Source: Octopus sinensis (taxonomy: Eukaryota). Taken from it: a stretch of 64,000 bases of DNA. The notes below the pieces were generated by a model. It saw only the letters and a list, made by a program, of their open reading frames with translations. It did not search any database and had not been told where the DNA came from. Location of the stretch: contig NC_043009.1 of assembly GCF_006345805.1 (NCBI RefSeq), forward strand, positions 69,192,001 to 69,256,000, read 5' to 3'. This document shows positions 16,053 to 37,140 of the stretch, piece after piece (the first letter of the stretch is position 1; each line of letters begins with the position of its first letter). Position numbers and translations under genes: made by a program.

Positions 16053-16324
16053 AATAATGTAATTGGTAATAAATTGACTAAACAAAATGACTGTTACATT
16101 TTACAGATACTGAAGGAAGTTTCGCAAGTGTCTGGTTGAGTGAGGAAGGTATCGGAATCGAATTCAAAGAACCTAATAATGCACTGTCGGCTGAAGTTGT
16201 CTTTCCGTGTGGACGACAATACAGCGTTAAAGGTAAGAGTTTGCTTCTTCGCTTCAGTTACAAAGGAAACAACAAGATCTTAGAGACGTTCTTTCTTGGC
16301 TTATGAGTTCGTCTGAGATGTGAT

Positions 16325-16485: not shown

Positions 16486-17310
16486 TGAAAAATAAATATC
16501 TTGGTAGCATGATGGCATTGTCTTACACTGCACTGCAATACAATTGAATTGTCTCAGTCACCAGGTTATAGATGTACAACACGACACCTTAACACTTTAT
16601 ACTATTCAAATAACAGAAAGAAATAAATTAAACGCAAATATGATGGCACCTTCCGATTAAATGGTCGTCATGATTCTTTCACATTAAAGATACTTGAAAA
16701 CATCTTGCTTGTGGAAATCTCTACAAGGGAGATGCAAGTAGGTTTCAGGGGTCAGCAGGTGAGAATGGACACCATTTTGGGGCCTTCCTCTTGACCCACC
16801 CCACTCCCTGAAGTGAGGACCCTGACTGGATCAAATGACCAGTGTTTGAATATGGTAAAGCTTTGAATCAGAAGCAATTCTTTGGTAGAAAGATATCGAA
16901 GAAATGTCTGTTTTTACCATTCTGCAATATTATTTGAATGAAGGAAATGGATTTGAGAAAGTGATTTATTCTTCATTGATTCCTTTTTGCAGGTGCCATG
17001 ACCAACAACAACACATTGTACCTGTATGGAGCAAACCAGAGCACTGCCATTGGAGTAACAGGTACCATACATTTTGTTTTTCGCTCTTTTCCATAATTCC
17101 AAGAGAAGAATCTAGCTGCTCTTTTAAAGACTGGCCTTCACACAAATGCAAAACAAGGAATGGTATTAAAAGAAAAATGGGAAAACTGAAATAAGTGTGT
17201 GTATGTGTGTGTGTGTGTAACAAATGCAAATGTAAAACATAAGAAATGATAAAGTTTTAATATACAATATAAGCAAATGCTAGAATGCAATGTGTGTGTG
17301 TGTATATATA

Positions 17311-17346
<36 letters not shown>

Positions 17347-17347
<1 letters not shown>

Positions 17348-18871: not shown

Positions 18872-18912
<41 letters not shown>

Positions 18913-19662: not shown

Positions 19663-19695
<33 letters not shown>

Positions 19696-20168: not shown

Positions 20169-20248
20169 ATGAGTAGATCTGTGATATTGGGAAAAGACTT
20201 AACAATAGTACTTTCTTTCATTGTTGTTGTTGTTTTTTGTTGTCATCG
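20169..20248 (+). CDS. Avidin gene B, candidate first coding exon, signal-peptide-like: MSRSVILGKDLTIVLSFIVVVVFCCH(R)
   Basis: Strong CG|gtaagt donor and a hydrophobic stretch. Phase 2 matches the 21880 exon. Confidence 0.5.
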
Positions 20249-21071
20249 GTAAGTTTCTTGTAAATTTATGTATATTTTAGGAATATTTATGAATGATGTT
20301 CTCTAGTGATATTTGTGTTCATAATTTGTACACTTACTTCTATAGGTGTTCACGAGCCGGCTTTGGGCAGATTCAAAGCATTTGTCATACTGTTATGTTA
20401 TTTACACAGATTAGGATTAATATTTCTGTATGTATTAAAAAAAAAAAAATTCAATCAACATTCAAGCCATAAATCATCGTGTTTTCTTTTCTGGTTTAGT
20501 ATTATACTTATCCTGTTTATTTCACCAGTTTACAGTTGGTGGAGTAGCAACTACTTATAGGTTAAACAAACATTAGGGACATAACCATTTGCTCCTTCAA
20601 AACTAGTCATCCATGATGTTATGGTTATTTCTACAGAAATTACTGCCAGCACTGATTCTTTTGCTGCAAGGCATCAGATGTAAACAAACAATGAAACCAA
20701 AGACAAAGGCCACAATAATTTCTGTAGAAATAACCTTAACAAAATAATGTAAAGAGCACTGCTAACACAGTAGAACATGGTGTTGACCTACAAAAATATT
20801 TAATATACTTTATTTATATTATGGTTGCATAACGAACTACCAAGTACTTAGAGGTCATGTGGTTCGTAAGCAAGTTACTTACCACACAGCCACTCATTAA
20901 CTTATCGAAACAATATCAAACCATAACAAAAATGAAAACAGTAAGAGAGATGATTTGTAATTTTATTAATCAATATTATTAAATGTTCATATATCTTGTG
21001 AATTTCCTGTAAAAAAAAAAAATTGACAAGTTGTAGTGCACCTGAGCACTGTATACAATAATTTCATTATA

Positions 21072-21106
<35 letters not shown>

Positions 21107-21553
21107 CATTATTATTATTATTAAAGTCATCTGTGAGTACTAAATATGCACAGGCTCTACATGAAAAATAAGAATTCACTTTTTCTCTGAGTATAAACTA
21201 TAGCACAGATTCAGAAAATATTCTGTATTCTGGCCCAAAAAGAATCTATTTAAGGAATGACAAATAACCAAATATTTTGTGGGGTGACAGCATAATTTCA
21301 TTGTTGAAATTATGCTGCAGACAAGTAATTTATATTGATCATACTTATTGGGAGAATTCAATTTATTTCAGCTGCTTATAACTGGTGGGTTTTTTTCATT
21401 AAACACAAAATTAATTAATTGCTGTATTTCTGAGAATTCATTATATTCAAACTTGATTTGATAAATTATAGTAAAAAATATCCAAATTGTCTAATAATGT
21501 CAAATATTCTCAGATAATGCAACAAGAAATTATACATAAAAATAATTAGTTTA

Positions 21554-21554
<1 letters not shown>

Positions 21555-21593
<39 letters not shown>

Positions 21594-21624
21594 ATGAGTG
21601 TGTGTGTATATACACACACATACA

Positions 21625-21671
<47 letters not shown>

Positions 21672-21840
21672 GCACACATATACATATCCATGTACATGTG
21701 TATGTATGTATGTATGTATGTATGTATATAAATACACATACACACACACACATATACATATCCATGTACATATGTGTATGTATGTATGTATGTACATATG
21801 TGTATGTATGTATGTATGTATGTATGTATGTATGTATATG
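21555..21840. repeat. Compound (TG)n/(TA)n/(TATG)n microsatellite
   Basis: Directly visible. Confidence 0.95.
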
Positions 21841-21879
21841 TATAGGTATTTACCTGTGATTTTAAATGTGATATTCTAG

Positions 21880-21967
21880 GGCAAATATAACTGAATCACT
21901 TTATAAAAATCAGATAAAATTGTATGCCCCAAAGAAACAAGTTCTGCTACTTTAGGCTGGGACCCTT
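21880..21967 (+). CDS. Gene B candidate exon: ANITESLYKNQIKLYAPKKQVLL(fs)LGWDP
   Basis: ttctag acceptor and gtatgt donor. Needs +1 nt in the TTT at 21951-21953 to remove a TAG and match the next phase. Confidence 0.5.
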
Positions 21968-22583
21968 GTATGTTTAGGACAGGCATGGCAAAACTTTTTC
22001 CAGCAGCAGACCACATGAGACATGGGTTCATCATGTGGCTGGCCACACTGCTAGAAATATTGGAGGTAATTTCTTGTTAGGCGTGCCATTCAGAAAGTGT
22101 GATGGGCCATAGGTTTCTGACAAATGTTTTAGGAAATCTATTCACTCAGCTCTCACTGTGGTTAATATGAAGGATACATCTACGGCAGCAAGCGGGCAGA
22201 AACATAAGCACAATGGGTAAAATGCTTGGTGGCATTCTTTACACTCTGAGTACAAATTCTGCCAAGGTCACTTTGACTCTCATCATTTTGGGGTCAATAG
22301 AATAAGTACCAGTTGAGTACTGGGGTCAATGTAATCAACTTACCCCCTCTCCCAAAATTACTGGCCTTGTGTCAAAATTTGAAATCAATATGCATTGTGA
22401 ATCTACTTATAAAACAAACACTCCAACAGTTACACTCAGGAGTATAGAATTTTTTAAATGATATTTGTTTATAAAGTGTATTGTTTATGTGTTTCAATTA
22501 ATTTTGATAACTTCAATAAATTTAGAGGGATTTAATTAAGTAATTTTCTCATTATTTCTCTGATGTCTGCAAATGTAATTTAG

Positions 22584-22790
22584 CAAAATTACCTAAAATG
22601 AAATTATTATGGAAAGTTTAAATTCAGAGACAAACACTTTAAAATGGTTAGTTTTGTTTCGTGGAACCAGAGATGGTCTCAGAAAAGTTAATATCAAAAT
22701 GGTTAAAGTAATGAGTAAAGGCAATAATTATCGGGTATGGGGTGTAATTAAATATAAATCTAATTTGGGGATGAGGTGGGGATTTACCTG
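22584..22790 (+). CDS. Gene B candidate exon: SKLPK(fs)NEIIMESLNSETNTLKWLVLFRGTRDGLRKVNIKMVKVMSKGNNYRVWGVIKYKSNLGMRW(fs)DLP
   Basis: aatttag acceptor, G|gtaaag donor, 207 nt. Contains ORF 22609-22794. Needs +1 at AAAA 22595-22598 and -1 at GGGG 22778-22781. Confidence 0.5.
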
Positions 22791-24039
22791 GTAAAGATCA
22801 GGGTGGACAACATAACAAATGCTATCAATAGTTATAATAGATTAATGAGATTTTAACCTCATGTTTACAAATGAATAGTCACCAATATCTATAGAATATT
22901 ATAGCTTACAGCTACAAACCTAGTCTGAAAGCTTCGAAAAATAAGTTCCATTATGAAGTCATAGAGAAGCAGAAGCCTTTTGGAGGACAACATTTAAAAT
23001 TTTTGTGGAAATGTAAAAATCAGAAAACAAACACCAAACAACAGATTTTTCTATTTGAAAAAAATTAAAAGTTTAAAAAAACTGCTGGACTGTATTGGGA
23101 TGAATATTGTGTATTCTGTTAAAAATAAGGAAGACTAAAAGAATCTAGATCAAGATATGGAATCAAATGATTTTGGGGATGAGATTTCAACAAAGTGGCT
23201 AAAATCTAAAAGTCAGAAGACATCTTGAATCAATCATAATTACTGGAGAATCCAATTTATTTTATGGGATTTTCTCTTGTTACAAGTGTCTTTTATTTGA
23301 TGTAGAATTAATTACTTTCTCAAAAATTAATTTTATTGTATTTTGAAAATGTGATTTTATACTTAACTGATTGGGAAAGAAATTAATATTTTCTTGTAAT
23401 AGAATATTGACTAAAAGGAATTCTTCAAAGTGGTGCCTCAGCATGGCCACAGTCTAATTAGTGAAACAAATAAAAGATATAAATTAGTCAAATGTCTTAT
23501 TTTACTTCAAGAATTCTCAGGACCATCAAAAACTCTTGTGTGTGTGTCGTGTTGTTTTGTTTTTGCTTTTTTATATAGAATGGGAAATAATGGATTGTAA
23601 AATTCCAACTTTGACCCCAAAAGACTGTAAAATATTTATGGTAAAATAGCTGAATGTGGAAAAGATTTGGTCTTTCATACAAATTTAGTGATGAGGTGCC
23701 GAGGTGGCCCCACAAAGCACAAGGTGGGTTGAAGAATCAATCTGCAAGATTGTAAGGGATGAGGAGGCAGACTGCCAAAATGGGTGGGGCTGAAGGGTGG
23801 ATGAGCGACAAGCTATGAGTCAGGAGAGTTAGAGTGATGCAGAAGAGAGGAAGTGGCAAGCAGCAGGAGTAGATGATACACTTGTCAGTAGGACAAGAGA
23901 GAGGTTGACATGGCTGGTAGTCTGTAGGAATAAGGGGTAGGGTGATGGCAGGGAGATGAGGCTGGCCTGATGCTTGGGTGCTGGGGAGGAGTCACTGTAA
24001 TGTGAGTAGAGAGCACAATACATAGCACTTCCAGAATTT

Positions 24040-24760
24040 AGCTTCAGTGACAACGGAGGGTCTTCTTAAGAACCTCATATCACCAGAGGTCCCAGTTTTT
24101 TGTCATTTCCTTTATCAGACTCAGAGTCCTAAAGTCAGCTTTAACGACTTCATCCTAAGTCTTCCTGGGTCTCCCTTTTCTGCAAATTCCAACCATATTT
24201 TGCATTTGGCACTTCTCTATACAGGTGTCCTCAACCATATGCATCACGTGTCCATACCAGCACAGACTTCTTTCTTGCACACAACAACTGATTCTTTTCA
24301 TGCACAGTTTTTCTCTCCGCACCTCTGTACTAGTTCTTTCTTATCAAATTGCACATTCAACAGAGTTGGCCCACTTAATTTCTTTCCAGTCTTCTCAAAT
24401 CCTCTGCATTCAAGGCCCATGTCTCACTACCATACAGTATTGCAGTTTATACACAGGCATCATACAGTCAGCCCTTCACTCTTAGAGAAAAGCACTCTGT
24501 TGTCAGCAGTGGTAGTAACTCCCTGAATTTTCTCTGGCCAAGTCTCTCTCAGGCTGCAATACCTTTAGAGCAGCCATCTTCCTTGCTAATTACATCTCCT
24601 AGGTAACAAAGCCTATCAACTACTTCTAGTGAGTCATCTGGGCATTTAAGAGAAACCATTTTCAGTGTGTCCAGACAAACTTCTCCAGAAAGCCTACCAT
24701 ATAAGAAGCTTACAGGGATTTCCCATTTCTTGAATGTCCATGGGTTATATTCTTTTCTAC
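24040..24760 (-). mobile_element. RTE LINE 3' coding fragment
   Basis: ORF 24549-24779 contains LEVVDRLCYLGDVIS, continuing toward the GRPRKT-type C-terminus. Confidence 0.8.
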
Positions 24761-25004
24761 TCAAGGCATAAAGGCCCAAAACCTTGGGAAGGGGACCAGT
24801 TGATTAAATCGACCCAGTACGCAACTGGTACTTAATTTATCAACCTCGAAAGGATAAAAGGAAAAGTCAGCCTTGGCGGAATTGTCCATAGTTTATATTG
24901 AAATCAAATAGTTAAACATTTTTTTCACATAAATAAATATTGTAGAAATAAAATATTTCTAAATCTCTCAGAGAGATTTATGCTGTCGCAGTACGATAAA
25001 GTGA

Positions 25005-25270
25005 CAGTATGTTGTCAGCTTAATGTGAGAGTCCCATGAAAGGGAAGATTGCTACTGTTATTTAACCCTAGGAAACACCATTTCCTGCGTCCTTATGCTT
25101 TCATTTCTTTATGTTTCATTTCCTGTGTCCTTATGACTGTCTCCACTTTGAAAACATAAGGACACAGAAAATGTGTCGAGTCCAACAGCAAATGGTGTTT
25201 CCTAGGGCTAAATAACAGTAGCATTCTTCCCTTTCATGGGACTGTCACATTAAGTTGACAATATGCTATC
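25005..25270. mobile_element. Palindromic foldback/MITE, about 80-bp arms plus an inner inverted repeat
   Basis: GTCCCATGAAAGGGAAG...CCCTAGGAAACACCATTT is inverted at about 25190-25270. Confidence 0.8.
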
Positions 25271-25366
25271 AATAAATATTGTCTTAATATTAAAAAAAAA
25301 TAATAATGACAGAATTTTTATTTTATTTATTAATTTTATTTTATTTTATTTTGTAATTTTCTCAAG

Positions 25367-25542
25367 GACTTTTCTTCAAGACAAAGATCGGTCAACTCTT
25401 GAAGATTACACTGGTCAAGTATGATTATGCCAATTGCACTGAATATACTCCAACAAAACTATCTTCACATGAACTGAAACCAACTCAGACACTTTCTTAC
25501 AACCCTGACCTCTGGATGTACCATAACTATGATGATTATATG
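25367..25542 (+). CDS. Gene B exon: GLFFKTKIGQLLKITLVKYDYANCTEYTPTKLSSHELKPTQTLSYNPDLWMYHNYDDYM
   Basis: Long T-rich tract plus aag acceptor, ATG|gtaagt donor, 176 nt open frame, phase 1-0. Confidence 0.8.
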
Positions 25543-26629
25543 GTAAGTTATCTAATAATTAGCATTTGATTTCAATCATTATGTTGATGAGTTAATAATT
25601 TGCTGATAGTATTTCTGTATCTCTTTTTTTCCTGAGTTTCGCTGCACACTTGATTTATTTCAAAATAATAATAATGATAATTCTGCTCAATACCACAGAT
25701 TTGCTTGTCAGTTATTTGACCTTAACCAGTTGAGCATGTCCCTTAGTGGCTGACGATATGTGCATCTCTGATCACGAGCAGAAGTAGTGAGGGAGCATCA
25801 TAGCCATGTGTCGAGAGGGATTCTTTGGGGTTTGAATAATTCACCTCTGGAAACATGGGTGGTTCTTTCAATATCCTTAAACAACCCTTATTCAGGGACC
25901 TTTTGAGCGGGATGGGCTACTCAACCAGAAGAAAATTCTAACTGGGCCCCACCTGCAAGGTCATGTGCTGTTTATCTTTTTATGAGTTCACCATGTCGCG
26001 CACATATGGTTGTGATGCATGTGCCTGGTGTACCTTTATCAGACGGGTAGTCATGATGGGTATATTGGGCTTCGTAAATTTTACCCCAGTGTCACTTTGA
26101 TGGCATGAACTGCTCTCTCACTCAATAATAATAATAATAATAATGATAATAATAATAAGTAAGCATGATAATAATTATAAGTGCACCAGTAAGCATTTTT
26201 GAGACATTTGATGTTGAAAATTGCAAAATTTTTAAAGTCTGTACAATGTAATCATCATCATCATCATCATCATTATCGTTTAACGTCTGTTTTCCATGCT
26301 AGCATGGGTTGGATGGTTCGATCAGGGATCTGGGAAGCCAGAAGGCTGCACCAGGTTCCAGTCTGATCTGGCAGTGTTTCTACAGCTGGATGCCCTTCCT
26401 AACACCAACCACTCCATGAATGTAGTGGGTACTTTTTACGTGCCACTGGCACAGGTGCCAGGCGAGGCTGGCAACGACCATGATCAGTTGGTGCTTTTAA
26501 TGTGCCACCGGCACAGGGACCACAACTACAATTTCCATTGATTTAATTTTACTAGCAATCTAATATTTGCATGTTGTTTATATTTTGAATTTTAAAGTTT
26601 GTTTTTTTCTACTTTTATAAATTCTTCAG

Positions 26630-26652
26630 AATGATCATGGCACCACAGATGC
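26630..26652 (+). CDS. Gene B 23-nt microexon: NDHGTTD(A)
   Basis: ttcttcag acceptor and GC|gtaatt donor. Phase 0-2 exactly bridges the 25542 and 27378 exons. Confidence 0.7.
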
Positions 26653-27377
26653 GTAATTTTGTTTATTAACTGTTATTTGGTTTTTAAAGATTGATAAATC
26701 TTGTAATCCTTTTCGTTTTCTTCATTATTTTCCTGGGAAGTGTGTTGCGTTGTTATTTTAAAGAAACTTTTCCTCCCCACCAGTTTCCTTTCTTTCTTGA
26801 TATGCTGGCATCGGTTGTTAGTTGTCAGAGCACTGCATCCTTCAAAACTTCCATGCTTCCTGAGATTCGCCAACACTACACCTGATTTTCTCCCCTCCAT
26901 ACACACGCAAGCATGTATCTGACTCATACACTGTTCGCTTCCCAGACATTTTTACATTACTGCATATGCTTTATACGCACTTTTGACAAGTTGTGGTAAG
27001 GTTTGGTGGAAGATCTTAATTCAAAACTTACTAAAGCAAGACATTTGTATTCAGAGCCAGAGCCGGTTTCAGCCAGGTTGGTAATGAAAGGGTTAATGTC
27101 TGTGTAATATAGAATACTATTGTAGTGTCACCATATGTAAATGTTTATATAACATAGAATTATAGTTTTTGTTGTGACAAAAGGACATCTGTGTTTTATA
27201 GGGCTCTAAAGGTGTGTAACCCTTTATATAAAATATCAATGTAACATATAACTATATTGATGTTTAACCAAGATGAAATGTCTGTGTAACCATTTATGTA
27301 TGTCTATGGAATAATGAAGTCTATGGCTGTGCTGCCAGATATCAATGTCCATAATATAGAATTCTCTTGCTATGCAG

Positions 27378-27548
27378 TAAGGTGACTTCTGAGAGTTCTA
27401 AACCCCAAAAATGGAACCATGGCATTCATAAGAATTCCAGTCTGATAAAGTTGTTAGAATTTTACTGTTTACCAACGTTAATCTACTTTCTTCTGATTCC
27501 TTTTCATAATGTTGGCTGCATTCTGGGACTTCCGAGCTTATAGTCAAG
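27378..27548 (+). CDS. Gene B exon: KVTSESSKPQKWNHGIH(fs)KEFQSDKVVRILLFTNVNLLSSDSF(fs)FIMLAAFWDFRAYSQ
   Basis: tatgcag acceptor and AAG|gtaagt donor. Needs +1 at AA 27430-27431 and +1 at TTTT 27501-27504. Confidence 0.65.
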
Positions 27549-27817
27549 GTAAGTAGGGCAATAAATTAAAGAATGGAGGGGGTGGAGAGGATGTTAAAAT
27601 AATTATCTACACATTCCCACCCTCCTCTCTCATTTGCTTCTCTTTCTCTCTTCCTTTTTATATACTCATATATATGTATATATGTATGTATATATAAATA
27701 TAGAAATATAATTAAGGGCTCCCAAATAAGGAAGCCTAGTGCTAGGGACACAAAAAGGGATAAATTCATCGAGAGTGAAAATCAAAAACATTTACCATTA
27801 ACCTTTTTGATTATTTG

Positions 27818-27851
<34 letters not shown>

Positions 27852-27854
<3 letters not shown>

Positions 27855-28060
27855 CTCTTACTCTTTTACACATTTCAGTCATTTGACTGCAGCCATGCTG
27901 GAGCACTGCCCTTAGTCGAAAAAATCGATCCCAGGACTTATTCTTTGTAAACCTAGCACTTACTCTATCAGCCTCTTAGGCCAAACCACTAAGTTATGGA
28001 GATGTAAACACACCAACATCGGTTGTTGAGTGATAGTGGAGGTTCAAACACTGACACACA

Positions 28061-28108
<48 letters not shown>

Positions 28109-28863
28109 GCTTCTTTCAGTTTCCATCTACCAAATCCTCTCACAAGGCTTGATCAGCTTGAGGCTATAGTAGAAGACACTTAACCAAGGTGCCATGCAGT
28201 GAGACTTAAACCAGAATCATGAGGTTGATAAGGAAGCTTCTTACCATACAGCCACTGCTGCACACACACACACACACCACACACACACACACACACACAG
28301 AGTCTTAGTCTAATTCAGAATTGCACCCAAAACTCAAAATTTGAAAAGTGAAAGTGGAACCGGTTATTATGTTGGAAGAAAAAAAACCTTATTTTGTAGA
28401 ATATTGCATAAAACCTCTGCAATTATGATTCTCATATATTCTTCAGTCTTGTAAAACAAATCTTGTGTTTTTCCATCTTATTTCTTTCTGTATATATTCA
28501 ACCACTTGTAATATATGTGTGTGTGGAGGCGCATGGCTCGGTGGTTAGAATGTCAAGCTTATGATCATGAGGTTGTGAGTTCAAATCCCGGACCGGGCTG
28601 CATGTTGTGTTCTTGAGCAAGACACTTTATTTCACATTGCTCCAGTTTACTTATCTGTAGAAATGAGTTGCAACATCACTGGTGCCAAGCTGTATCGGCC
28701 CCTTTGCCTTTCCCTTGGATAACACTGGTGGTGTGGAGAGAGGGGAGGCCAGTATGCATGGGCGACTGCTGGTCTTCCATAAACAAACTTGCCCGGACTT
28801 GTGCCTGGAAGGGTAACTTCCTAGGTGCAATCCCATGGTCAGTCATGACTGAAGGGGGTCTCA

Positions 28864-28899
<36 letters not shown>

Positions 28900-29105
28900 C
28901 TCTTACTCTTTTACACATTTCAGTCATTTGACTGCAGCCATGCTGGAGCACTGCCCTTAGTCGAAAAAATCGATCCCAGGACTTATTCTTTGTAAACCTA
29001 GCACTTACTCTATCAGCCTCTTAGGCCAAACCACTAAGTTATGGAGATGTAAACACACCAACATCGGTTGTTGAGTGATAGTGGAGGTTCAAACACTGAC
29101 ACACA

Positions 29106-29155
<50 letters not shown>

Positions 29156-29305
29156 GCTTCTTTCAGTTTCCATCTACCAAATCCTCTCACAAGGCTTTGA
29201 TCAGCTTGAGGCTATAGTAGAAGACACTTAACCAAGGTGCCATGCAGTGAGACTTAAACCAGAATCATGAGGTTGATAAGGAAGCTTCTTACCATACAGC
29301 CACTG

Positions 29306-29340
<35 letters not shown>

Positions 29341-29900
29341 CTTAGTCTAATTCAGAATTGCACCCAAAACTCAAAATTTGAAAAGTGAAAGTGGAACCGG
29401 TTATTATGTTGGAAGAAAAAAAACCTTATTTTGTAGAATATTGCATAAAACCTCTGCAATTATGATTCTCATATATTCTTCAGTCTTGTAAAACAAATCT
29501 TGTGTTTTTCCATCTTATTTCTTTCTGTATATATTCAACCACTTGTAATATGTGTGTGTGGAGGCGCATGGCTCGGTGGTTAGAATGTCAAGCTTATGAT
29601 CATGAGGTTGTGAGTTCAAATCCCGGACCGGGCTGCATGTTGTGTTCTTGAGCAAGACACTTTATTTCACATTGCTCCAGTTTACTTATCTGTAGAAATG
29701 AGTTGCAACATCACTGGTGCCAAGCTGTATCGGCCCCTTTGCCTTCCCTTGGATAACACTGGTGGTGTGGAGAGAGGGGAGGCCAGTATGCATGGGCGAC
29801 TGCTGGTCTTCCATAAACAAACTTGCCCGGACTTGTGCCTGGAAGGGTAACTTCCTAGGTGCAATCCCATGGTCAGTCATGACTGAAGGGGGTCTCAGCA
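27852..29900. repeat. Tandem duplication of about 1.04 kb (27852-28866 and 28897-29900) made of SINE fragments between (TA)n tracts
   Basis: The differences seen between copies are microsatellite and homopolymer lengths only. Confidence 0.95.
28523..28864 (+). mobile_element. tRNA-derived SINE (family 1 head, different tail); duplicate at 29557-29898
   Basis: TGGCTCGGTGG box A, GAGTTCAAATCC box B, TGTTCTTGAGCAAGACACTT. Confidence 0.85.
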
Positions 29901-29929
29901 TATATATATATATATATATATATATACAG

Positions 29930-30021
29930 TCCTAAGAAGTGAAACTATGGTTTATATCTGGCACCTGTCTATCACACACATTCGGTTCACAGCTTGTTTT
30001 CAACTCCAGTCTTTGATTAAG
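29930..30021 (+). CDS. Gene B exon starting VLRSE; downstream frame ambiguous (one base short)
   Basis: tacag acceptor after (TA)n and AAG|gtaaga donor. 92 nt where 93 is needed to join the next exon in phase 1. Confidence 0.55.
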
Positions 30022-30488
30022 GTAAGAAAGTGTTTGCATGCCACAACACCACAACACATAGAAGACCACTTATATCAGTTAGTTTATATATTACAGTTGT
30101 CATTGTTGGAAATGGTGTGATCTATAAACACACTAATCTGGGATGATACATCATAATCTGTAGTAGACTATAAAGATAGTATGTCTACGTTTGGTTCTAC
30201 AGCATAGCCTGGTGTGGTCTATGAATATACCAAATAATAATGCTACATCTTGGTCAGGTTTGGTCTACAAGCATACCATTCTCTGATGCCGTGTCACTTG
30301 TCTGGTGTATCGTCTCCCATACAGAGAGAATAAATTAAAAAGTAGCATTTGAATAGTTAAAATATGTTTATATACCACAACACACAATGGACCCACTCAA
30401 AGCCAGTGGCTTATTTTTCTCACTTAGCTAGACCAGGGATTACATCTGAAACCACATTAATCTAACTACATCTGTTGTGATGTTACAG

Positions 30489-30649
30489 CTTGGCCCAATG
30501 GCTCATCTGTTGAATTTGTCCTTTAATCCTGAACAACATTAATCTTTCATCTGTCATAATAGCACCCTGGTGTAATCTGAATGGAACTTGGTACAATGAA
30601 CTGGGCTCTTCAATGTTTATAAGACAAACTGAAAATGGTTTGTTGGAAG
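30489..30649 (+). CDS. Gene B exon, linker plus avidin beta1-beta3: AWPNGSSVEFV(fs)PLILNNINLSSVIIAPWCNLNGTWYNELGSSMFIRQTENGLLE
   Basis: CNLNGTWYNELGS is the avidin/streptavidin signature (chicken CSLTGKWTNDLGS, streptavidin GTWYNQLGS). ttacag acceptor, G|gtaagc donor. Needs +1 at CC 30520-30521. Confidence 0.88.
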
Positions 30650-31613
30650 GTAAGCAAAATCTATTTTCAATGCATTATAACATAGAATATTATTGTTTAC
30701 ATTATCTGAATTCAGTACCAGACCATTTTATTTCATGAATTTTTGTATTATTTGAAATGTTTTTGCTTATTATTACTTCTACATATTTGTTAACTCTTTT
30801 TGAGTTTCATCTTATTTCTCCGTGTCCCAACAGGACAGGAAAGTCAGCCGGTTTTCAGGGCTTTGACTCTTTTGAACATCTTTACGCTAATGACCCCCTG
30901 TTTTTGGTGGAATCAACCCTTCCACTAACAAATACATTAGTGTAGGAACTTTGATGCAATCCTTTAAAACTAGAATAAAAGTCAAGTCAAAGATTTATAT
31001 ATGTAGATTTAAAGGAACATTTTTTATGGTGCGCACATAATTTTATGTCTATTGAAGGGATAAAGCTTTCAATGCTTTACAGACTCATGGTTGTATAGAA
31101 TATAAACATCAAAGTGGTGTATATAGAGCAGCTGTGTGGAAGAGAAACATCAATGTGGTTTATATACCACAACTATGTACAATATAAAACATTAAAGGGG
31201 TGTGTATATACTGCAATTGTACACACCATCAACATCAATGCATTGTATATACCACAACTTTGTTTAATATACAATGGAACACTGATATAACCACAGAGTT
31301 ATTTCTTGATGTCAAATTCCTAAAACTATTTTTCATAATGTAAACGATGATGATGATGTTAAGAGAACAAGATATGAGAGAGAAGATGGAAGCACCCAAT
31401 ACACTGAAGCTGATAAATCCGTCAAGCCACCTCCCTGTCTTAAAAAAAAGAAAATGAACACATTAAATGATGTAGTCCATGGTACATTGTGACTGGAAGA
31501 AAGACAGAATGGTCAAGGCTTGATCAGAAGCTGACCTGGAGCTAAACTACAAATAATAACAGTTCTTAAGATTTTGTTGTGTCCAGCATTTTTATATTGT
31601 TGTTTTGTATTGG

Positions 31614-31648
<35 letters not shown>

Positions 31649-31868
31649 CACATGCACACACACACACACAATATGATGGGCCAAATCAGTAATCTTGGAA
31701 CCAAGTTCAGCACAATATAACTACCATTAATAGAACAGCAACACCTTTGTCCACCGTTCCCTTAATTTGTCCAAATTTGATGCTCATGGCTTTGAAAGAC
31801 AGTAAAAGCAGTGTTACCAAAGTATTCATAATTTCATTAATTTTGGGTAATTTTTTATTTTATTCAAG

Positions 31869-32006
31869 GTCAATATAACACTGCTGTCGAACGTAACAAT
31901 GGTACCTCTGGAGGAGGTAAAGCAGATCTTCATGGTACCATCAGTTACTCAGTCTTTAGTTTTGGTGTTGTTTGGAATGAAGGAACTTCCATTACTGTCT
32001 TCAGTG
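31869..32006 (+). CDS. Gene B exon: GQYNTAVERNNGTSGGGKADLHGTISYSVFSFGVVWNEGTSITVFS
   Basis: caag acceptor, G|gtgagt donor, 138 nt, phase 1-1. Avidin Y33/T35/W70/S75/T77/F79 equivalents are present. Confidence 0.92.
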
Positions 32007-32251
32007 GTGAGTAGTAGTAACAAAAGTATACACACCCACATATATATATATATGTATGTTATACATACATACATACAACATACAGAAACAAATAAATAAC
32101 AACAGATGGAAAATGTGTCAATACCCTACAGCTGTTTCCAATGAATTTTTAATTGATTAACAGAGATATTACATCATTAGTAAAAAACAGTTACATCAGG
32201 TGAATACATGAGCCACAACATTCAAAAGTATTCAAAGTCAACGGGATGTGA

Positions 32252-32285
<34 letters not shown>

Positions 32286-32439
32286 GGTGGCTGCCCCCTC
32301 ATCGAGTATGGCCATTGCACAAAGCTTAATCAATGTTGTTATCGTGCAATGACTGTGCAAGAAGATTTTTTTTAAGTGGAGAAAGGCTGTGCACTGAGTC
32401 AATCCCACTCACTAAGCAACAGCAGCCATAATCTGAAAA

Positions 32440-32835
32440 GAAGAACAAGTTAACATTATCGGTAACCATTGGGCCGCAGGTTTTATGTCGGAGTTATCCC
32501 AGTTACCTGAGTTACCTTCTCCTAGAAGGATGCCCTAACAAAGGCTAGGAGTCCTTCACTCCTAATGGTTTAACTGCATGATCGGGTATTCAGTCCGATT
32601 ATTTCTATGTCCCCGTGCATGATACAGTCTTAAGATGTTTATTGGATGGCCGTTGACTCTCAAGAGTTCCTCTGCCCTTTGACGGGTTTTGTTTTTCATC
32701 CCGCAGGGTGTCCAATAAACACCCTCCTCACCAAGCAAACTTGGTGGGGTTGCTGGTTTAGTCGCCGACGACCCGACCATGCAACAGGTTGTACTGGGTT
32801 ACATGTTACCAGTAGCACACGAAAGTGACCTGACA
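32440..32835 (-). mobile_element. Hairpin-rich retroelement fragment, possibly an RTE 5' UTR or a derived SINE
   Basis: CTAGGAGAAGG..AACTC motif recalled from RTE 5' regions, plus several consecutive hairpins. Confidence 0.45.
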
Positions 32836-32946
32836 CTATATATGTTGTTAAGATGTTTTTATTTATTGTCACATAATGTGTTTTGTTGACATTTTACTTT
32901 ATTAAATGCCTAATGCCTACCCTGAGAATTAACTTATGGTCTGTCT

Positions 32947-32996
<50 letters not shown>

Positions 32997-32998
32997 TA

Positions 32999-33029
<31 letters not shown>

Positions 33030-33055
33030 AATATGTGTGTGTTTGTGTTCTCTAG

Positions 33056-33181
33056 GTCAGTGTATCCCTTCATCAAACAATGGCATTGTGTTGAAAGCCC
33101 ACTGGTCATTGGTTGCAGCTCAAAGATCTGTTAAGACCAGCTGGAGTGCATTTTACACAGGAATGGACAATTTCTACAAAG
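33056..33181 (+). CDS. Gene B exon: GQCIPSSNNGIVLKAHWSLVAAQRSVKTSWSAFYTGMDNFYK
   Basis: tctag acceptor, G|gtgaga donor, 126 nt. C83/W97/W110/N118 equivalents are present. The following intron start is homologous to that of gene A. Confidence 0.92.
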
Positions 33182-34003
33182 GTGAGAGATCTTTGATTTT
33201 ACCTATAATGATGGGTGGATGAATGGATGGATAACCGAGTGTTGACTGAAATGGTAAGTGGAAAGCATTGAGGATTAACGTATAGATGGGTGAATGAGGG
33301 AATAACAAAGTGAATGGGTAGGTAGATGGGTGGATGGATTAGGAGTAATATGATTGAAAAGTTAGGTGGACAGATGGCATAGATGCATAAAATACCAATG
33401 AATGAATAAATGGATTGATGGGATATGGATGGATGTCTGGAAAGATAATTAGATACTTAGATAAGCATAGATTAGGATTTTCAGATAAACAGACAAACTA
33501 TTAGACAAATAGATGGACAGAAAAATGGATAGTCAGAACAGAACCAAAAGAAGGCATAATTCCACCAGACAAGAACAACCAACAGTTTCACTGTTTAACA
33601 ATTGATTCAGGGTTTTATTTAATAAACTGACAAAATAACAACTAACAGGCAGTAATAATTGATAATCTAACAAAGAACCTCTAAGTGATTGCTAGAACTA
33701 CAAAAATTAGCTGCCAAAATCCATTCAAATTATGCCTTTCCCCCTCATAAAAGGAAGGCTACATTGAAGAAGATAGTCTTAGATACACTGTGTCCAAAAT
33801 CAAAACAGGATATTTAGTGTGAGAATAACTTTGATTATTGGTCTATTCATCCTAGCTCTAGTTTTGTTTCCTATAAGCATACAAAACTAGAGCTACTAGA
33901 TGATAGCCTGGATTCTAACTTTACCAAACTTGATGCCTGTTCAAAATATTCCTGTCAAAGTCTGTCAGTTTGGCTGACAGAAATCTGCAATAACATTACA
34001 GAT

Positions 34004-34253
34004 AAGTGGTTCTCAACCATCCATCCTATGAACCCATTTGATTCCTGCTTCACTCAGAGAGACCTCCATGGCCATTTGATGTTTAAATAATCCTATTCTA
34101 TTTCTATAATTAAATGCTCGTAGGAATTGTATAAAAGAAACAGTTAAAATATTTTGGGTTTGGCAGAAGCAGAACCAGTTTATTGCAAATAAATTTTAAC
34201 AGCAAAATCCTTATATGGACCCCTTCTCCTAAGACCCTGGTTGAAAATCACTG
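34004..34253. mobile_element. hAT-type MITE (reverse partial copy at 47211-47430)
   Basis: Termini AGTGGTTCTCAACC and GGTTGAAAATCACTG. Confidence 0.7.
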
Positions 34254-36755
34254 CTGTAGCTACTTAAAGAGGGTGTGATTAATATTTATCACAATGTGCT
34301 GGTGGCACGTGAAAGCACTTTTTGAGCATTGGGCCTCATAGAGGCAAGGACCAAGACCATTTGGCATTATGCTGGGCTTTGAGCATTGGGCCTCACAGAG
34401 GCAATGACTCAGTCTTTTGGCATTATGTTGGGCTTGAGAATAAAAACCATCAAGCCAAGGAAAATCACAGTAATGGCAGATACTGGATTCATGCAAATGG
34501 CACATAAAAGCACCCATTACACTCTTGGAGTGGTTGGCATTAGGAAGGGCATCCAGCTGTAGAAACCATGCAAAAACAGACTGGTGTCTGGTGCAGACTT
34601 TCAACTTACTAGTCCTGGTCAAACCGTCCAACCCATGCCAGCATGGACAATGGACGTTAAATGATGATGATGATGATGATGTAGACACAATAAAACAACA
34701 GAATCCAGCGAAACTAGTGACAGTCTACATTTGCAAATAGTAAGAGTAAATTGGCAAGGGTTGGCAGCAGCAGTAAGAATAAAGACAAACCTGATGTTTC
34801 AGATTGGGCTTTTCTTCAGAAAGAAGGAACCCAGGTTCCCAGAAGGACTCATGGCATAATTTCAGATCTTTTTTCTAACTCACTGTAACCACCATCATCA
34901 TCATTTAACGTCCGCTTTCCATGCTAGCATGGGTTGGACAATTTGACTGAAGTCTGGCGAACCAGACTCCAATCTGATCTGGCAGAGTTTCTACAGCTGG
35001 ATGCCCTTCCTAATGCCAACCACTCCGAGAGTGTAGTGGGTGCTTTTATGTGCCACCGGCACGAGGGCCAGTTTGGTGGTACTGGCAACGGTCACGCCCA
35101 AATGGTGCTTTTTACATGCCACTTACACAGGAGCCAGTCCAGCGGCACTGACGATGACCTCGCTCGAATGTTTCACGTTCCACCAGCACAATTGCTAGTA
35201 AGGTGATGCGGTAACAATCACGCTCGAATGGTGTGTTTAACGTGCCATCAGCATGAAGGCCAGCTTGTTGCTCTGGCAATGATCTCACTCGTATGGTACT
35301 CTTAGTGCTCCACAACCAACGGATGCCAGTCACCCAGCTTATTTCACTTTTATTCACTTTAAGATTTGAACCTTCCTCTTCCATGTCATTTTAACATCCA
35401 CTTTCCCATGCAGCATTGGTCAAGGAAAATTTCCTAGGGCTGGATGTGCCTCCTGATTGTTGTTTTGAAAAGATATAATGTTGTACCCAGTGTGTTTCTA
35501 AATATTCCAGAAGAGTTTTAATAACAGGATGAGTAATTGGCAGAGTTAAGAGAGCACAGGACAAAATGATTGATAAAATAAAGAACCAATCAAGGAAATT
35601 GGAATGGTAGAAATGTTAGATCTTCAGACAAGATTCCTTGCTGTGTTTGTTTTTGGTCTTTTATAATGTGTATTTTTAGATGAAGTTGGTGAGTTAGCAG
35701 AATTGTCAGCATGCCAGACAAAATGCTTGGCAGCATTTCGTCTATCTTTATGTTCTGAGTTCTAATTCCACTGAGGATGCCTTTCATCCTTTCAGTGTTG
35801 ATAAAATAAGTACCAGTTAAGTACTAGGGTCAATGTAATCGACTTATCCCCTCCCCCGAAATTGCTGGCCTTGTGCCAAAATTTGAAACTAGTATGAATT
35901 ATCCACTTTAAAACCATTACCTGATCCTTGGGTTCCTTTTATGAAGTTTTCAAACATTTGGGTCAGGTGTCTGACTGGGATAGAATTTCTTTCCCACCAG
36001 GTTTATGGGCCCCTTCCATCTTTTCCTCCCTCTGATCCTTCCAAGATTAATTAGTGAAAAATAAATGTCTTGAACACTGAAGTCTGGTTGTCGAAAATAT
36101 AGCTTCTTAGAAAAGGAAACTGCATCCTGTTTGTGAGGGGTGGACAAGGGATGGATTTCACCTTAATGTGACTGCGTATAATTATGTGAATTTATTCTTT
36201 TATACTCTAGGCACAAGGCTCAAAGTTTTGGGGGAGTGGGGGCAGTCGATCAGATCAACCCCAGTACACATCTGGTACTTAATTTATTGACTTGGCAAAG
36301 TCGACCTCAGTGGAATTTGAACTCAGAATGTAAAGACAGACGAAATACTGCTAAGCATTTCGCCTGGAATATAAATGTTTCTGCCAGCTTGCCACCTTCA
36401 TTATGGAAATTGATTCATATCATTCATCTTCCACGCTGGCATCAGTTGGACAGTTTGACAGGAGCTGGCAAGCCTGAGTGCTGCACCAGGCTCCAGCTGC
36501 CTGTTTTGGCAAGGTTTCTATGGCTGAATGCTCTTCCTAAGGCCATCCGCTTCACAGAGTGTACTGGGTGCTTTTTGTAAGACACCAGCACAGGTGCTTC
36601 TTCTGTGGCACTGGCATGGATGCTATATATATGTATATATATGTATATATATATAAATTTAAAATGGTGAGAAATTAGATATTAATTTAATTAACATCGA
36701 TGTCACACCAGTGGTCTAGCATATAAAAAAACTGAAGGTCCAGTAAAATTGTATT

Positions 36756-36915
36756 ATATACATATTAGAGGGAAACCACTATGTGGACACCTTTATGCTA
36801 GAAGTAGATCCGCTATGGTCTTACCACTTGAGAACATTTCTTAGTGGTAAGACCATAGCAGATCTATATCTAGCATAAGGGTGTCCACATAGTGGTTTCC
36901 CTCTAATATGTATAT
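36756..36915. mobile_element. Near-perfect palindrome/MITE, about 72-bp arms, TA-flanked
   Basis: 36756-36828 is the reverse complement of 36843-36915 with few mismatches. Confidence 0.85.
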
Positions 36916-37123
36916 GATATATATAGATGATGATGATGATGATGATATATATCATCATTGTTTAAAATCTATTCTCTATGCTTGCATGGGTTGGACATCT
37001 GTGTGTGTGTGTGTGTGTATATGCACACATGCATGCTTATATATATATATATGTGTGCGCATGTATCTATAAAATTCAGATTGCCATCGTCTGACCTTAA
37101 TTTGTGATATTCCTTTATTTCAG

Positions 37124-37140
37124 ATTCTAAAGAGGAATAA
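37124..37140 (+). CDS. Gene B terminal coding exon (DSKEE*), followed by 3' UTR
   Basis: tttatttcag acceptor and matching phase. Downstream sequence is homologous to that of gene A. Confidence 0.78.

What the first reader, a model, noticed from the sequence alone, without database searches (positions are those of the whole stretch)
20169..37140. Cryptic multi-exon gene: putatively secreted protein fusing an unrecognised domain of about 270 aa to a C-terminal avidin domain
Seen: about 11 exons with canonical GT-AG sites whose phases chain together, giving about 425 aa ending in a full avidin barrel (CNLNGTWYNELGS...GQC...W...W...GMDNF). Established: avidins are biotin-sequestering beta-barrels, usually single-domain and about 125-130 aa when mature. 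Extended forms exist, such as the EGF-avidin fibropellins of sea urchin and some bacterial fusions. Inference: this is an extended avidin with an N-terminal domain I do not recognise (motifs LLGWDP, YRVWGVIKYK, PDLWMYHNY, WNHG, RILLFTN, LAAFWDF). It may be a biotin-depriving antimicrobial or a biotin-targeted effector in eggs, mucus or saliva. I know of no characterised cephalopod avidin. Exons upstream of 25367 are less certain.
Basis: partly seen in the sequence, partly recalled or inferred. Interest (0 to 1): 0.88.

Follow-up and report, generated by a model that had tools for sequence, protein, structure and literature searches.

The report
Octopus gene chaining avidin-fold barrels
In this genome the splice site that should join the two barrels reads TG instead of the normal AG.

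Summary
The C-terminal avidin is confirmed: Pfam Avidin E=1.6e-25, five exons from 27512 to 37140, and 15 of 19 biotin-contact residues kept.

Only exon 25367-25542 has homologues. The proposed exons at 20169, 21907 and 22597 have none. Three of the motifs lie in three different frames within 120 nt.

The idea itself survives. An Argonauta hians protein (536 aa) reads signal-[N-domain-linker-avidin]x2, and the window holds the matching N-domain exons at 16107-16232, 16993-17061 and 25367-25542. An upstream avidin (174-1469) is in phase to splice into them.

An AlphaFold model of the Argonauta N-domain (about 50% identical to the window's) matches only avidin-family structures. A whole-module model best matches engineered single-chain dimeric streptavidin. 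The N-domain lacks the biotin-contact tryptophans.

The best reading is a secreted natural single-chain avidin with alternating inactive and active barrels.

One problem remains. The linker-exon acceptor is TG, where Argonauta has AG, and published Octopus gene models break at or near this junction. Whether the barrels are joined here needs RNA data. This is a new variant of a known kind, of moderate interest.

The parts
174..314 (+). Exon 2 of the upstream avidin barrel (avidin-1). Its first exon and everything 5' of it lie off the window.
   Evidence: tblastn with the avidin query, 69% identity, E=3e-19. AG|...|GT sites, phase 1 in and out.
1344..1469 (+). Exon 3 of avidin-1 (GQCIPSSNNATF...NNFYR). 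The donor is in phase 1 with a G.
   Evidence: tblastn E=9e-15. Splice sites. In phase to join either 8049 or 16107.
8049..8065 (+). Relic or alternative terminal exon of module 1 (..R-ELIEK*), followed by a homologous 3' UTR and a poly(A) signal at 8167.
   Evidence: 8030-8295 is 70% identical to 37105-37363. Sequence. Poly(A) signals lie about 100 nt after both stops.
16107..16232 (+). N1, the first exon of the diverged avidin-like barrel (N-domain) of module 2: (D)TEGSFASVWLSEEGIGIEFKEPNNALSAEVVFPCGRQYSVK.
   Evidence: tblastn to A. hians P0003 residues 280-324, E=6e-8, and to O. bimaculoides P0004, E=2e-5. cag|..|gtaaga sites, phase 1 to 1. No ATG in the upstream frame.
16993..17061 (+). 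N2, the second N-domain exon: (G)AMTNNNTLYLYGANQSTAIGVT.
   Evidence: tblastn E=1e-4 (P0003) and 9e-6 (P0004). gcag|..|gtacca sites, phase 1 to 1.
25367..25542 (+). N3, the third N-domain exon: (G)LFFKTKIGQLLKITLVKYDYANCTEY...NYDDYM.
   Evidence: It was the only part of the 277-aa concatenated query to hit anything in the exhaustive search, E=5e-19 and 7e-11. tblastn E=7e-14 and 3e-19. caag|..|gtaagt sites, phase 1 in and 0 out.
27202..27219 (+). Short phase-0 terminal exon (GSKGV*) at which the O. vulgaris 230-aa model ends. It may be an annotation patch or a real alternative end after the N-domain.
   Evidence: The O. vulgaris gene end at L001 9711 maps here. The tatag| acceptor is shown. 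The length arithmetic 13+217=230 aa fits the chain A2'-A3'-N1-N2-N3-GSKGV (inference).
27512..27548 (+). Linker exon (L)AAFWDFRAYSQ joining the N-domain to avidin-2. The acceptor is non-canonical: TG at 27510-11 or 27513-14. The ATG at 27509 is used as the start codon by the O. vulgaris annotation. The donor AAG|gtaagt is a perfect match to consensus.
   Evidence: Homologous to the A. hians module-2 linker TSFWDTPLNNK, which has the acceptor tgtag|. Identical in O. vulgaris. TGA at 27494 closes the frame upstream. The next AG is 22-25 nt downstream and out of frame.
30563..30649 (+). Avidin-2 exon 1: (A)PWCNLNGTWYNELGSSMFIRQTENGLLE.
   Evidence: Present in the O. vulgaris protein P0002.
31869..32006 (+). 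Avidin-2 exon 2: (G)QYNTAVERNNGTSGGGKADLHGTISYSVFSFGVVWNEGTSITVFS.
   Evidence: 87% identical to the O. bimaculoides protein P0001.
33056..33181 (+). Avidin-2 exon 3: (G)QCIPSSNNGIVLKAHWSLVAAQRSVKTSWSAFYTGMDNFYK.
37124..37140 (+). Terminal coding exon (D)SKEE*, with a poly(A) signal at 37240.
   Evidence: Matches the C-terminus DSKEE of P0001 and P0002. Poly(A) signal.

Best explanation
The finding sits inside a larger octopod gene that encodes a chain of avidin-fold beta-barrels built from repeated modules.

Anatomy. Each module has three parts:
- a short linker exon;
- a canonical avidin barrel (three exons).

In Argonauta hians the annotated product is signal peptide plus two such modules (536 aa). 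The window holds the second half of module 1's avidin (174-1469), a relic terminal exon (8049), all of module 2 (16107-33181) and the terminal exon (37124-37140).

Inferred mechanism. The protein is secreted through the signal peptide of the off-window first exon. Each module folds on itself like a single-chain avidin or streptavidin dimer. The canonical barrel binds biotin; it keeps 15 of 19 contact residues and the disulphide. The diverged barrel lacks the biotin-contact Trp and Tyr residues, so it would act only as a structural partner, replacing the neighbouring subunit of classical tetrameric avidins. The likely role is biotin sequestration, as for egg-white avidin.

Open point. In this genome and in O. 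vulgaris the linker-exon acceptor is TG where Argonauta module 2 has AG. Joining the diverged barrel to avidin-2 therefore needs a non-canonical GT-TG splice. An out-of-frame AG lies 22-25 nt downstream. Whether that splice happens is not shown.

What is shown and what is inferred. Shown: the exons, their phases and homology, and the fold of the relative's domain as modelled. Inferred: a single transcript, secretion, biotin binding, intramolecular pairing and use of the TG site.
For: Avidin-2:
- Pfam Avidin E=1.6e-25, full length.
- 40% identical to chicken avidin, with N12, L14, S16, Y33, T35, V37, T40, W70, S75, T77, F79, W97, L99, W110 and C4-C83 conserved.

N-domain exons and their relatives:
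- P0003 is A. hians GAB1601784.1. P0004 is O. bimaculoides A0A0L8HYN0, which consists of signal peptide plus N-domain.
- tblastn places the other N-domain exons at 16100-16234 and 16980-17072, with canonical sites and chained phases.
- The chain A2'-A3'-N1-N2-N3-linker-A1-A2-A3-terminal is one open frame of 346 aa with two Pfam Avidin stretches.

One multi-module gene:
- The A. hians gene maps to 16 exons in the order signal, N1-N3, linker, A1-A3, N1-N3, linker, A1-A3, terminal.
- The window junction FYR-D-TEGSFASVW mirrors the A. hians junction FYR-E-SERGFSSSW.
- The O. vulgaris 230-aa Avidin-containing model spans the same stretch, and its length equals 13+217 aa of that chain.

Fold:
- The N-domain model has 8 strands, core pLDDT 70-84 and pTM 0.60.
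- All of the top 50 PDB matches are avidin-family proteins. Shwanavidin scores E=2e-4 and avidin TM 0.71.
- The N2|N3 intron sits in a Gly codon, phase 1, at the seventh residue of strand 6, exactly as the A2|A3 intron does in the avidin barrel.
- The whole-module model has pTM 0.74. Its best match is single-chain dimeric streptavidin 6s50 over both barrels, TM 0.67 against about 0.41 for single avidins.

TG acceptor:
- The pyrimidine tract is 0.75, as at the other acceptors. The exon is 34 nt from the ancestral site, as in A. hians.
- The annotated A. hians module-1 linker also uses a TG acceptor with an AG 15 nt downstream.
- TG acceptors are documented within 28 nt of an AG (PMC2374985).
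Against: - No transcript or protein data were available. The A. hians, O. vulgaris and O. bimaculoides proteins are all computational models. The A. hians models came from GINGER, which mixes ab initio, RNA-seq and homology evidence (PMC12682272).
- Both Octopus annotations break at or near the N-domain/linker junction.
- In humans, TG acceptors were never the sole acceptor of an intron, and AG-to-TG mutants used a neighbouring AG instead. Here that AG would give a frameshift and a stop (LIVKHPGVI*).
- Sequence methods do not link the N-domain to avidin: hhalign probability 0.1%, no Pfam hit, no PDB sequence hit.
- The structure models rest on alignments of 5 and 11 rows. They are of the A. 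hians relative, about 50% identical, not of the window's own protein. Only the best of five module models is confident (75 against 54-64).
- The relic terminal exon at 8049 keeps a poly(A) signal, so module 1 may end there.
- UniProt names P0004 a 'Reelin domain-containing protein'.
- The signal peptide is off the window.
Confidence: 0.55

Rival explanations
1. The gene is split, as currently annotated in Octopus. The AG-to-TG change destroyed the linker acceptor. The upstream transcript then ends after the diverged barrel, through the GSKGV* exon at 27202 or through the downstream AG with a frameshift. Avidin-2 would be either an untranslated relic or a separate 135-aa product starting at ATG 27509 without a signal peptide.
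For: - The O. vulgaris protein P0002 starts with MLAAFWDFRAYSQ at this ATG, and the neighbouring model ends at 27219.
- O. bimaculoides P0004 ends by reading into the intron after its N3-type exon, and P0001 starts inside avidin exon 1.
- There is no AG between 27497 and 27534, and TGA lies at 27494.
- Human AG-to-TG mutants do not splice at the TG.
- The ratio of non-synonymous to synonymous changes between the window and O. vulgaris in avidin-2 is about 5:4, which cannot be told apart from weak constraint.
Against: - MLAAFWDFRAYSQ is not a signal peptide: its best 8-residue hydropathy is 1.3. Yet the barrel keeps the disulphide cysteines and NxT sequons expected of a secreted protein.
- Two short upstream ORFs precede ATG 27509 in the same exon.
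- The avidin-2 reading frame is intact in the window, O. vulgaris and O. bimaculoides, which is 87% identical.
- The linker codons stay in frame with N3 and resemble the A. hians linker at FWD.
- Pipelines that accept only canonical splice sites would break the model here even if a TG junction were used.
Confidence: 0.33
2. One reading: one 425-aa secreted protein that starts at ATG 20169, has a 270-aa domain of unknown fold encoded by exons at 20169, about 21907, about 22597, 25367 and 27378-27548, and ends in the avidin barrel.
For: The motifs exist in the sequence. Exon 25367-25542 and the avidin exons are real.
Against: - Three motifs of the 27378-27548 'exon' are in three different frames.
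- The phases do not chain at 20248 to 21914/21955, or at 25542 to 27378.
- There are no homologues for the 20169, 21907 and 22597 pieces.
- The true N-domain exons are at 16107 and 16993.
- These pieces lie in the 8.3-kb N2-N3 intron, among microsatellites and SINE-like repeats, with a LINE-like remnant on the opposite strand.
Confidence: 0.02
3. The N-terminal domain is a Reeler (reelin N-terminal) domain, as the UniProt name of O. bimaculoides A0A0L8HYN0 suggests, and not an avidin-like barrel.
For: The source name is 'Reelin domain-containing protein'.
Against: Pfam shows no Reeler hit at E<=1 for the window domain, P0003 or P0004. The model has 8 strands, and all of the top 50 Foldseek hits are avidins; none is a reeler domain.
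Confidence: 0.05

Closest known systems
Vertebrate avidins (chicken avidin, AVR4/5, xenavidin, zebavidin)
   Same: The C-terminal barrel is a full-length Pfam Avidin domain. It is 40% identical to chicken avidin, with E=9e-16 to AVR4/5. It shares the disulphide and 15 of 19 biotin contacts. The modelled relative superposes on these structures at TM 0.83-0.88.
   Different: The vertebrate proteins are single-domain, about 128-aa subunits that form homotetramers. Here the barrel is one unit of a multi-barrel chain. Contacts F72 and S73 and loop 3-4 differ, and N118 is Asp, which by my recollection is what streptavidin has at the equivalent position.
Sea-urchin fibropellin avidin-like domain
   Same: Both are extracellular mosaic proteins in a marine invertebrate. 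Both contain an avidin-fold domain that has lost biotin-binding residues and is thought to serve in assembly (Yanai 2005, cited in PMC10336842).
   Different: Fibropellins combine a C1s-like N-terminal domain and up to 21 EGF repeats with one non-binding avidin-like domain. The octopod protein has no EGF hit in Pfam. It alternates non-binding with apparently binding-competent barrels.
Engineered dual-chain and single-chain avidins and single-chain dimeric streptavidin (PDB 2c4i, 6s50)
   Same: Two avidin-fold barrels sit in one polypeptide. 6s50 is the best structural match of the module model across both barrels, with TM 0.67 and E=2.5e-11. 2c4i is the best PDB sequence hit.
   Different: Those proteins are laboratory constructs made of two active barrels. 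The octopod module is natural, its partner barrel is only 10-17% identical to avidins, and that barrel probably does not bind biotin.
TG-AG tandem 3' splice sites of human U2 introns (Szafranski et al. 2007, PMC2374985)
   Same: A TG lies at the position of the acceptor, behind a normal pyrimidine tract, with an AG within the 28-nt limit: 22-25 nt in the window and 15 nt in A. hians module 1.
   Different: Use of the TG is unproven here. The AG alternative is out of frame in the window. In humans, TG was never the sole acceptor.

Membership tests
Avidin/streptavidin family (Pfam PF01382): C-terminal barrel | Full-length match to the family profile above the curated cut-off | tested here: met
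   90.2 bits against a cut-off of 24, positions 1-115 of 116, E=1.6e-25. Two stretches are found in the 346-aa chain.
Avidin/streptavidin family (Pfam PF01382): C-terminal barrel | Eight-stranded up-and-down beta-barrel | tested here: met
   In the module model of the A. hians relative (56% identical), the avidin part has 8 strands and pLDDT 84-90. It matches avidin structures at TM 0.80-0.88. The test is on a relative, not on the window protein itself.
Avidin/streptavidin family (Pfam PF01382): C-terminal barrel | Conserved biotin-contact residues (Asn12, Ser16, Tyr33, Trp70, Trp97, Trp110 and others) and the Cys4-Cys83 disulphide | tested here: met
   15 of 19 contacts are identical and both cysteines are present. 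The differences are F72E, S73G, T38N, A39G and N118D. The chicken sequence and residue list came from my own knowledge.
Avidin/streptavidin family (Pfam PF01382): C-terminal barrel | High-affinity biotin binding | not testable with these tools
   Needs recombinant protein and a binding assay.
Avidin/streptavidin family (Pfam PF01382): C-terminal barrel | Secretion signal | tested here: inconclusive
   No signal-type first exon in phase 1 was found between 8066 and 30562. Relatives carry a signal peptide on the first exon (P0003 MGRLVVVGLFLVLCWCCVES, P0004 MRLSIAFALLSLSLCQA), which would lie off the window.
Avidin fold: N-terminal (diverged) barrel | Structural match to avidin-family barrels | tested here: met
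   The AF2 model of the A. hians module-2 N-domain (about 50% identical) has avidin-family proteins as all of its top 50 Foldseek PDB hits, with E from 2e-4 and TM 0.57-0.71. Confidence is moderate and the alignment is shallow.
Avidin fold: N-terminal (diverged) barrel | Detectable sequence homology to PF01382 | tested here: not met
   No Pfam hit at E<=1. hhalign probability 0.1%. No PDB sequence hit. Only one shared intron position and short motifs (G.W, LHG, GQ...N..ILK) point to common descent.
Avidin fold: N-terminal (diverged) barrel | Biotin-contact tryptophans and Tyr33 | tested here: not met
   No Trp is conserved after strand 1 across the four N-domains, and there is no Tyr at the strand-3 position (alignment). 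The domain should therefore not be called a biotin-binding avidin.
Reeler domain (Pfam PF02014) | Profile match or reeler-type fold | tested here: not met
   No Pfam hit and no reeler structure among the top 50 fold matches, despite the UniProt name.
Fibropellin-type mosaic avidins | EGF repeats and a C1s-like N-terminal domain N-terminal to the avidin-like domain | tested here: not met
   Pfam on P0003 and on the window chain shows only Avidin.
TG-AG tandem acceptors | A TG acceptor with an AG no more than 28 nt downstream, behind a pyrimidine tract | tested here: met
   TG at 27510-11 and 27513-14, AG at 27535-36, pyrimidine fraction 0.75. The limit comes from PMC2374985.
TG-AG tandem acceptors | Spliced transcripts that use the TG | not testable with these tools
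   No transcript data could be reached.

The most novel reading that the evidence does not exclude
Octopods make a natural single-chain pseudo-tetrameric avidin: four avidin-fold barrels in one secreted polypeptide, two active and two inactive, the inactive ones replacing partner subunits. In Octopus its production depends on a conserved non-canonical GT-TG splice at the exon that links an inactive barrel to an active one. That splice could act as a switch between a full-length biotin binder and a truncated product.
Probability: 0.25. Interest if true: 0.7.

Novelty: new variant of a known kind. Interest (0 to 1): 0.5.

Why it matters
Classical avidins bind biotin tightly partly because four identical subunits assemble and exchange a tryptophan. 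To control how many sites a molecule has, engineers have fused barrels into dual-chain and single-chain avidins and streptavidins.

A natural protein that already chains avidin barrels, and has let every second one lose its binding residues, would show how evolution solved the same problem. It would offer a new scaffold with a defined number of binding sites. It would also be the first cephalopod avidin worth characterising, whether for egg or mucosal defence or for biotin transport.

The TG acceptor makes this locus a concrete test case for non-AG 3' splice sites outside vertebrates. It also explains why three annotation sets cut this gene into pieces.

Tried and rejected
- The first avidin search returned only two short Octopus models.
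- A search with the upstream paralogue found no candidates, so a search was wasted.
Only the exhaustive HMMER search found the relatives, and only through exon 25367-25542.
- I first concluded that the N-terminal extension was spurious and that 27509-27548 was a truncated signal exon. I dropped this once P0003 showed that the exon is an internal linker.
- A scan for an alternative signal-peptide first exon in phase 1 between 8066 and 30562 gave nothing convincing. The best candidate, 13042-13117 (MFCSCYCVRLFLLNMWLCIACLTGA), has a weak donor.
- A-to-I editing of AA to AI at 27508-09 would create an acceptor, but in the wrong frame, so I rejected it (sequence).
- Splicing N3 directly to avidin exon 1 is out of phase (0 against 1).
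- I found no relic terminal exon in the A. hians A3-to-N1 intron.
- Substitution counts between the window and O. vulgaris are too few to test for selection.
The relative had to be modelled instead.
- Literature searches found no characterised cephalopod avidin and nothing for LOC115218491.

Full report
**What the window is.** The window is AT-rich eukaryotic DNA, full of microsatellites and dispersed repeats. It is 92-99% identical, mostly 95-99%, and collinear to Octopus vulgaris chromosome OX597826.1 at 81.24-81.27 Mb (locus L001; L001 position 1 = window 21950). It therefore comes from O. vulgaris or a very close relative.

The avidin part is correct:
- Exons 30563-30649, 31869-32006 and 33056-33181, plus a 17-nt terminal exon 37124-37140 (DSKEE*), all have GT-AG sites and phase-1 junctions.
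- The product matches Pfam Avidin end to end, E=1.6e-25.
- It is closest to vertebrate avidins among solved structures: AVR4/5 E=9e-16, and 40% identity to chicken avidin.
- It keeps 15 of 19 biotin-contact residues and the Cys4-Cys83 pair.

- WNHG, RILLFTN and LAAFWDF lie in three different frames within 120 nt.
- The LAAFWDF frame is closed by TGA at 27494.
- Exon 25367-25542 ends in phase 0 and cannot enter the 27378 acceptor in an open frame. The 20169 exon (phase 2) runs into stops at the candidate acceptors of the next piece.

**The turn.** The exhaustive HMMER search with the same concatenation gave two hits, both only through exon 25367-25542.
- P0003 is Argonauta hians GAB1601784.1 (536 aa).
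- P0004 is O. bimaculoides A0A0L8HYN0 (161 aa).

P0003 reads: signal peptide, a roughly 135-aa domain, an avidin barrel, the same domain again, and a second avidin barrel. Its stretch 'DYL-TSFWDTPLNNK-ALNCSLEGTWYNDLGSS' is homologous to the window's 'DYM-LAAFWDFRAYSQ-APWCNLNGTWYNELGSS'. The short exon that the O. vulgaris annotation uses as a start exon (P0002, MLAAFWDFRAYSQ...) is therefore an internal linker exon in the relative.

tblastn of P0003 and P0004 against the window placed the missing exons of the domain at 16107-16232 and 16993-17061. Both have canonical sites, and their phase-1 junctions chain into 25367-25542.

**The gene is probably larger still.**
- The window starts inside another avidin barrel (exons 174-314 and 1344-1469).
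- The phase-1 donor of that barrel joins exon 16107 to give FYR-D-TEGSFASVW, the same junction as FYR-E-SERGFSSSW in A. hians.
- Chaining all these exons gives one open frame of 346 aa in the window, with two Pfam Avidin stretches.
- The A. hians gene maps to 16 exons in exactly this order.
- The O. vulgaris annotation has a 230-aa Avidin-containing model that runs across this stretch and ends at a tiny exon, GSKGV*, at window 27202-27219. Its length equals 13 residues from an internal Met in avidin exon 1 plus the 217 residues of A2'-A3'-N1-N2-N3-GSKGV (my arithmetic, since the sequence itself could not be retrieved).
- A relic terminal exon (8049-8065, ELIEK*) has a 3' UTR 70% identical to the real one and a poly(A) signal at the same distance. 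This shows that the modules arose by duplication of a complete unit. It also leaves open that module 1 can end there.

**What the 'unrecognised domain' is.** Sequence methods give nothing: no Pfam hit, no PDB sequence hit, and hhalign against the octopod avidin profile gives probability 0.1%. UniProt calls P0004 a 'Reelin domain-containing protein', but no Reeler profile hit appears.

Structure gives a clear answer:
- An AlphaFold2 model of the A. hians module-2 domain (about 50% identical to the window's; the window's spliced sequence was not accepted as first row) has eight strands, core pLDDT 70-84 and pTM 0.60.
- All of its 50 best PDB matches are avidin-family barrels, including shwanavidin, avidin, rhizavidin, hoefavidin and streptavidin. 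E starts at 2e-4, TM is up to 0.71, and identity is 10-17%.

Three further observations fit common descent:
- The N2|N3 intron interrupts a Gly codon in phase 1 at the seventh residue of strand 6, exactly as the A2|A3 intron does in the avidin barrel.
- Short motifs line up: G.W in strand 1, LHG in strand 4, and GQ...N..ILK across strands 6-7.
- The other intron position is not shared.

The domain has no conserved tryptophan after strand 1 and no Tyr33 equivalent. It is therefore very unlikely to bind biotin.

**How a module may fold.** A model of one whole A. hians module (255 aa) reached pLDDT 75 and pTM 0.74. Its best PDB match is engineered single-chain dimeric streptavidin 6s50. That alignment covers both barrels (284 columns, TM 0.67, E=2.5e-11), whereas single avidins reach only TM 0.41 on the query length. 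The best PDB sequence hit of avidin-2 was likewise dual-chain avidin 2c4i.

This suggests that the diverged barrel packs against the active one as a neighbouring subunit does in avidin or streptavidin. It is a model-based inference from shallow alignments, and only one of the five models was confident.

**The splice-site problem.** In the window, and identically in O. vulgaris, the linker exon is preceded by '...ttctgattccttttcataatgTTG|GCTGCATTCTGGGAC'. A. hians module 2 has '...ttccttttcctattttctcttgtag|ACTTCATTCTGGGAC'.
- The ancestral tAG corresponds to tTG here. The exon measured from that point is 34 nt in both species.
- There is no AG between the upstream in-frame stop and 27535. That AG would give a frameshift and the ending LIVKHPGVI*.
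- The only in-frame way to join the diverged barrel to avidin-2 is therefore a GT-TG intron, with the acceptor at 27510-11 or 27513-14.

For use of the TG:
- The pyrimidine tract is normal.
- The linker stays in frame.
- The avidin-2 reading frame is intact in three Octopus species.
- The barrel looks like a secreted protein, yet its annotated start has no signal peptide.
- The annotated A. hians module-1 linker also uses a TG acceptor with an AG 15 nt downstream. That annotation came from a pipeline that includes RNA-seq evidence (PMC12682272).
- Human TG acceptors exist within 28 nt of an AG (PMC2374985).

Against use of the TG:
- In the same study, TG was never the sole acceptor, and AG-to-TG mutants activated nearby AGs.
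- Both Octopus annotations break at or near this junction, although pipelines that accept only canonical splice sites would do that in any case.

I could not reach transcript data.

**Verdict.** The avidin is real. The extension exists but is about half the claimed size.

The gene is best read as part of an octopod multi-barrel avidin, a natural counterpart of engineered single-chain avidins. It is probably a secreted biotin binder in which inactive barrels stand in for partner subunits. Whether this Octopus genome still joins the barrels across the TG acceptor is open: I put the fused product at about 0.55 and the split gene at about 0.33.

No cephalopod avidin has been characterised in the searchable literature. 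The proteins exist in databases only as 'uncharacterized' or mislabelled models. I rate this a new variant of a known kind, of moderate interest.

Noticed in passing
window 2427-6248: A 3.8-kb GC-rich satellite with a 16-bp unit (CTTATCACCTCCTGGC, about 239 copies, 87% matches) and strong strand skew. It lies between avidin-1 exon 3 and the relic terminal exon.
   Followed up: no
window 55245-64000: A tandem satellite of more than 8.7 kb with a unit of about 157-160 bp and a 313-bp higher-order period. It runs off the end of the window.
   Followed up: no
window 40069-41181 (-) and 47914-48774 (-): Two intronless C2H2 zinc-finger ORFs (370 and 286 aa, 84-bp finger period) sit inside a duplicated block of about 3.3 kb (39596-43135 and 47441-50738, about 91% identical). 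The first corresponds to a 370-aa O. vulgaris gene model for which no Pfam hit is on record. Pfam here gives zf-C2H2 at E=1.7e-70.
   Followed up: partly
window 27822-29926: A tandem duplication of about 1.05 kb (98.4% identical copies) lies in the intron between the linker exon and avidin-2 exon 1. O. vulgaris L001 has a single copy, so the duplication is specific to the window's genome.
   Followed up: no
window about 23650-24750 (-): The minus-strand translation reads '..LYDACV.TAILYGSETWALNAEDLRRLERN..'. From my own knowledge this resembles the C-terminal part of a LINE reverse-transcriptase ORF, broken by stops. Pfam gave no hit, so it is unconfirmed.
   Followed up: partly
window 12457-12670, 13789-14006, 17408-17578, 22181-22415, 35688-35895, 36189-36400; and 16325-16481, 19092-19243, 19250-19395, 26255-26520, 34492-34681, 34890-35137, 43425-43690: Two families of short dispersed repeats, apparently SINE-like, 70-92% identical and in both orientations.
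   Followed up: no
L001 (O. vulgaris) 13294-13493, corresponding to window 31869-32006: The O. vulgaris protein P0002 skips the second half of avidin exon 2 by using an internal donor (GGAGGAG|gtaaag). The full exon is intact in both genomes. The 105-aa model would lack strands 4-6, so it is probably an annotation artefact or a minor isoform.
   Followed up: partly
window 174-314: In the upstream avidin barrel (avidin-1) the biotin-contact Tyr33 is Phe (GQFRTAVE, against GQYNTAVE in avidin-2 and GNYYTAVE in A. hians). The three tryptophans are kept.
   Followed up: no
L001 3716-8667, against window 25681-26182: About 5 kb present in O. vulgaris has no counterpart in the window, which has about 0.5 kb of other sequence there. 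This is a large indel in the intron just after exon N3.
   Followed up: no
L002 (A. hians) 14332-14334: The annotated A. hians gene model uses a TG acceptor (aaattttg|ATTCAC) for the module-1 linker exon. An in-frame canonical AG lies 15 nt downstream and would simply omit five residues (IHMYE).
   Followed up: partly
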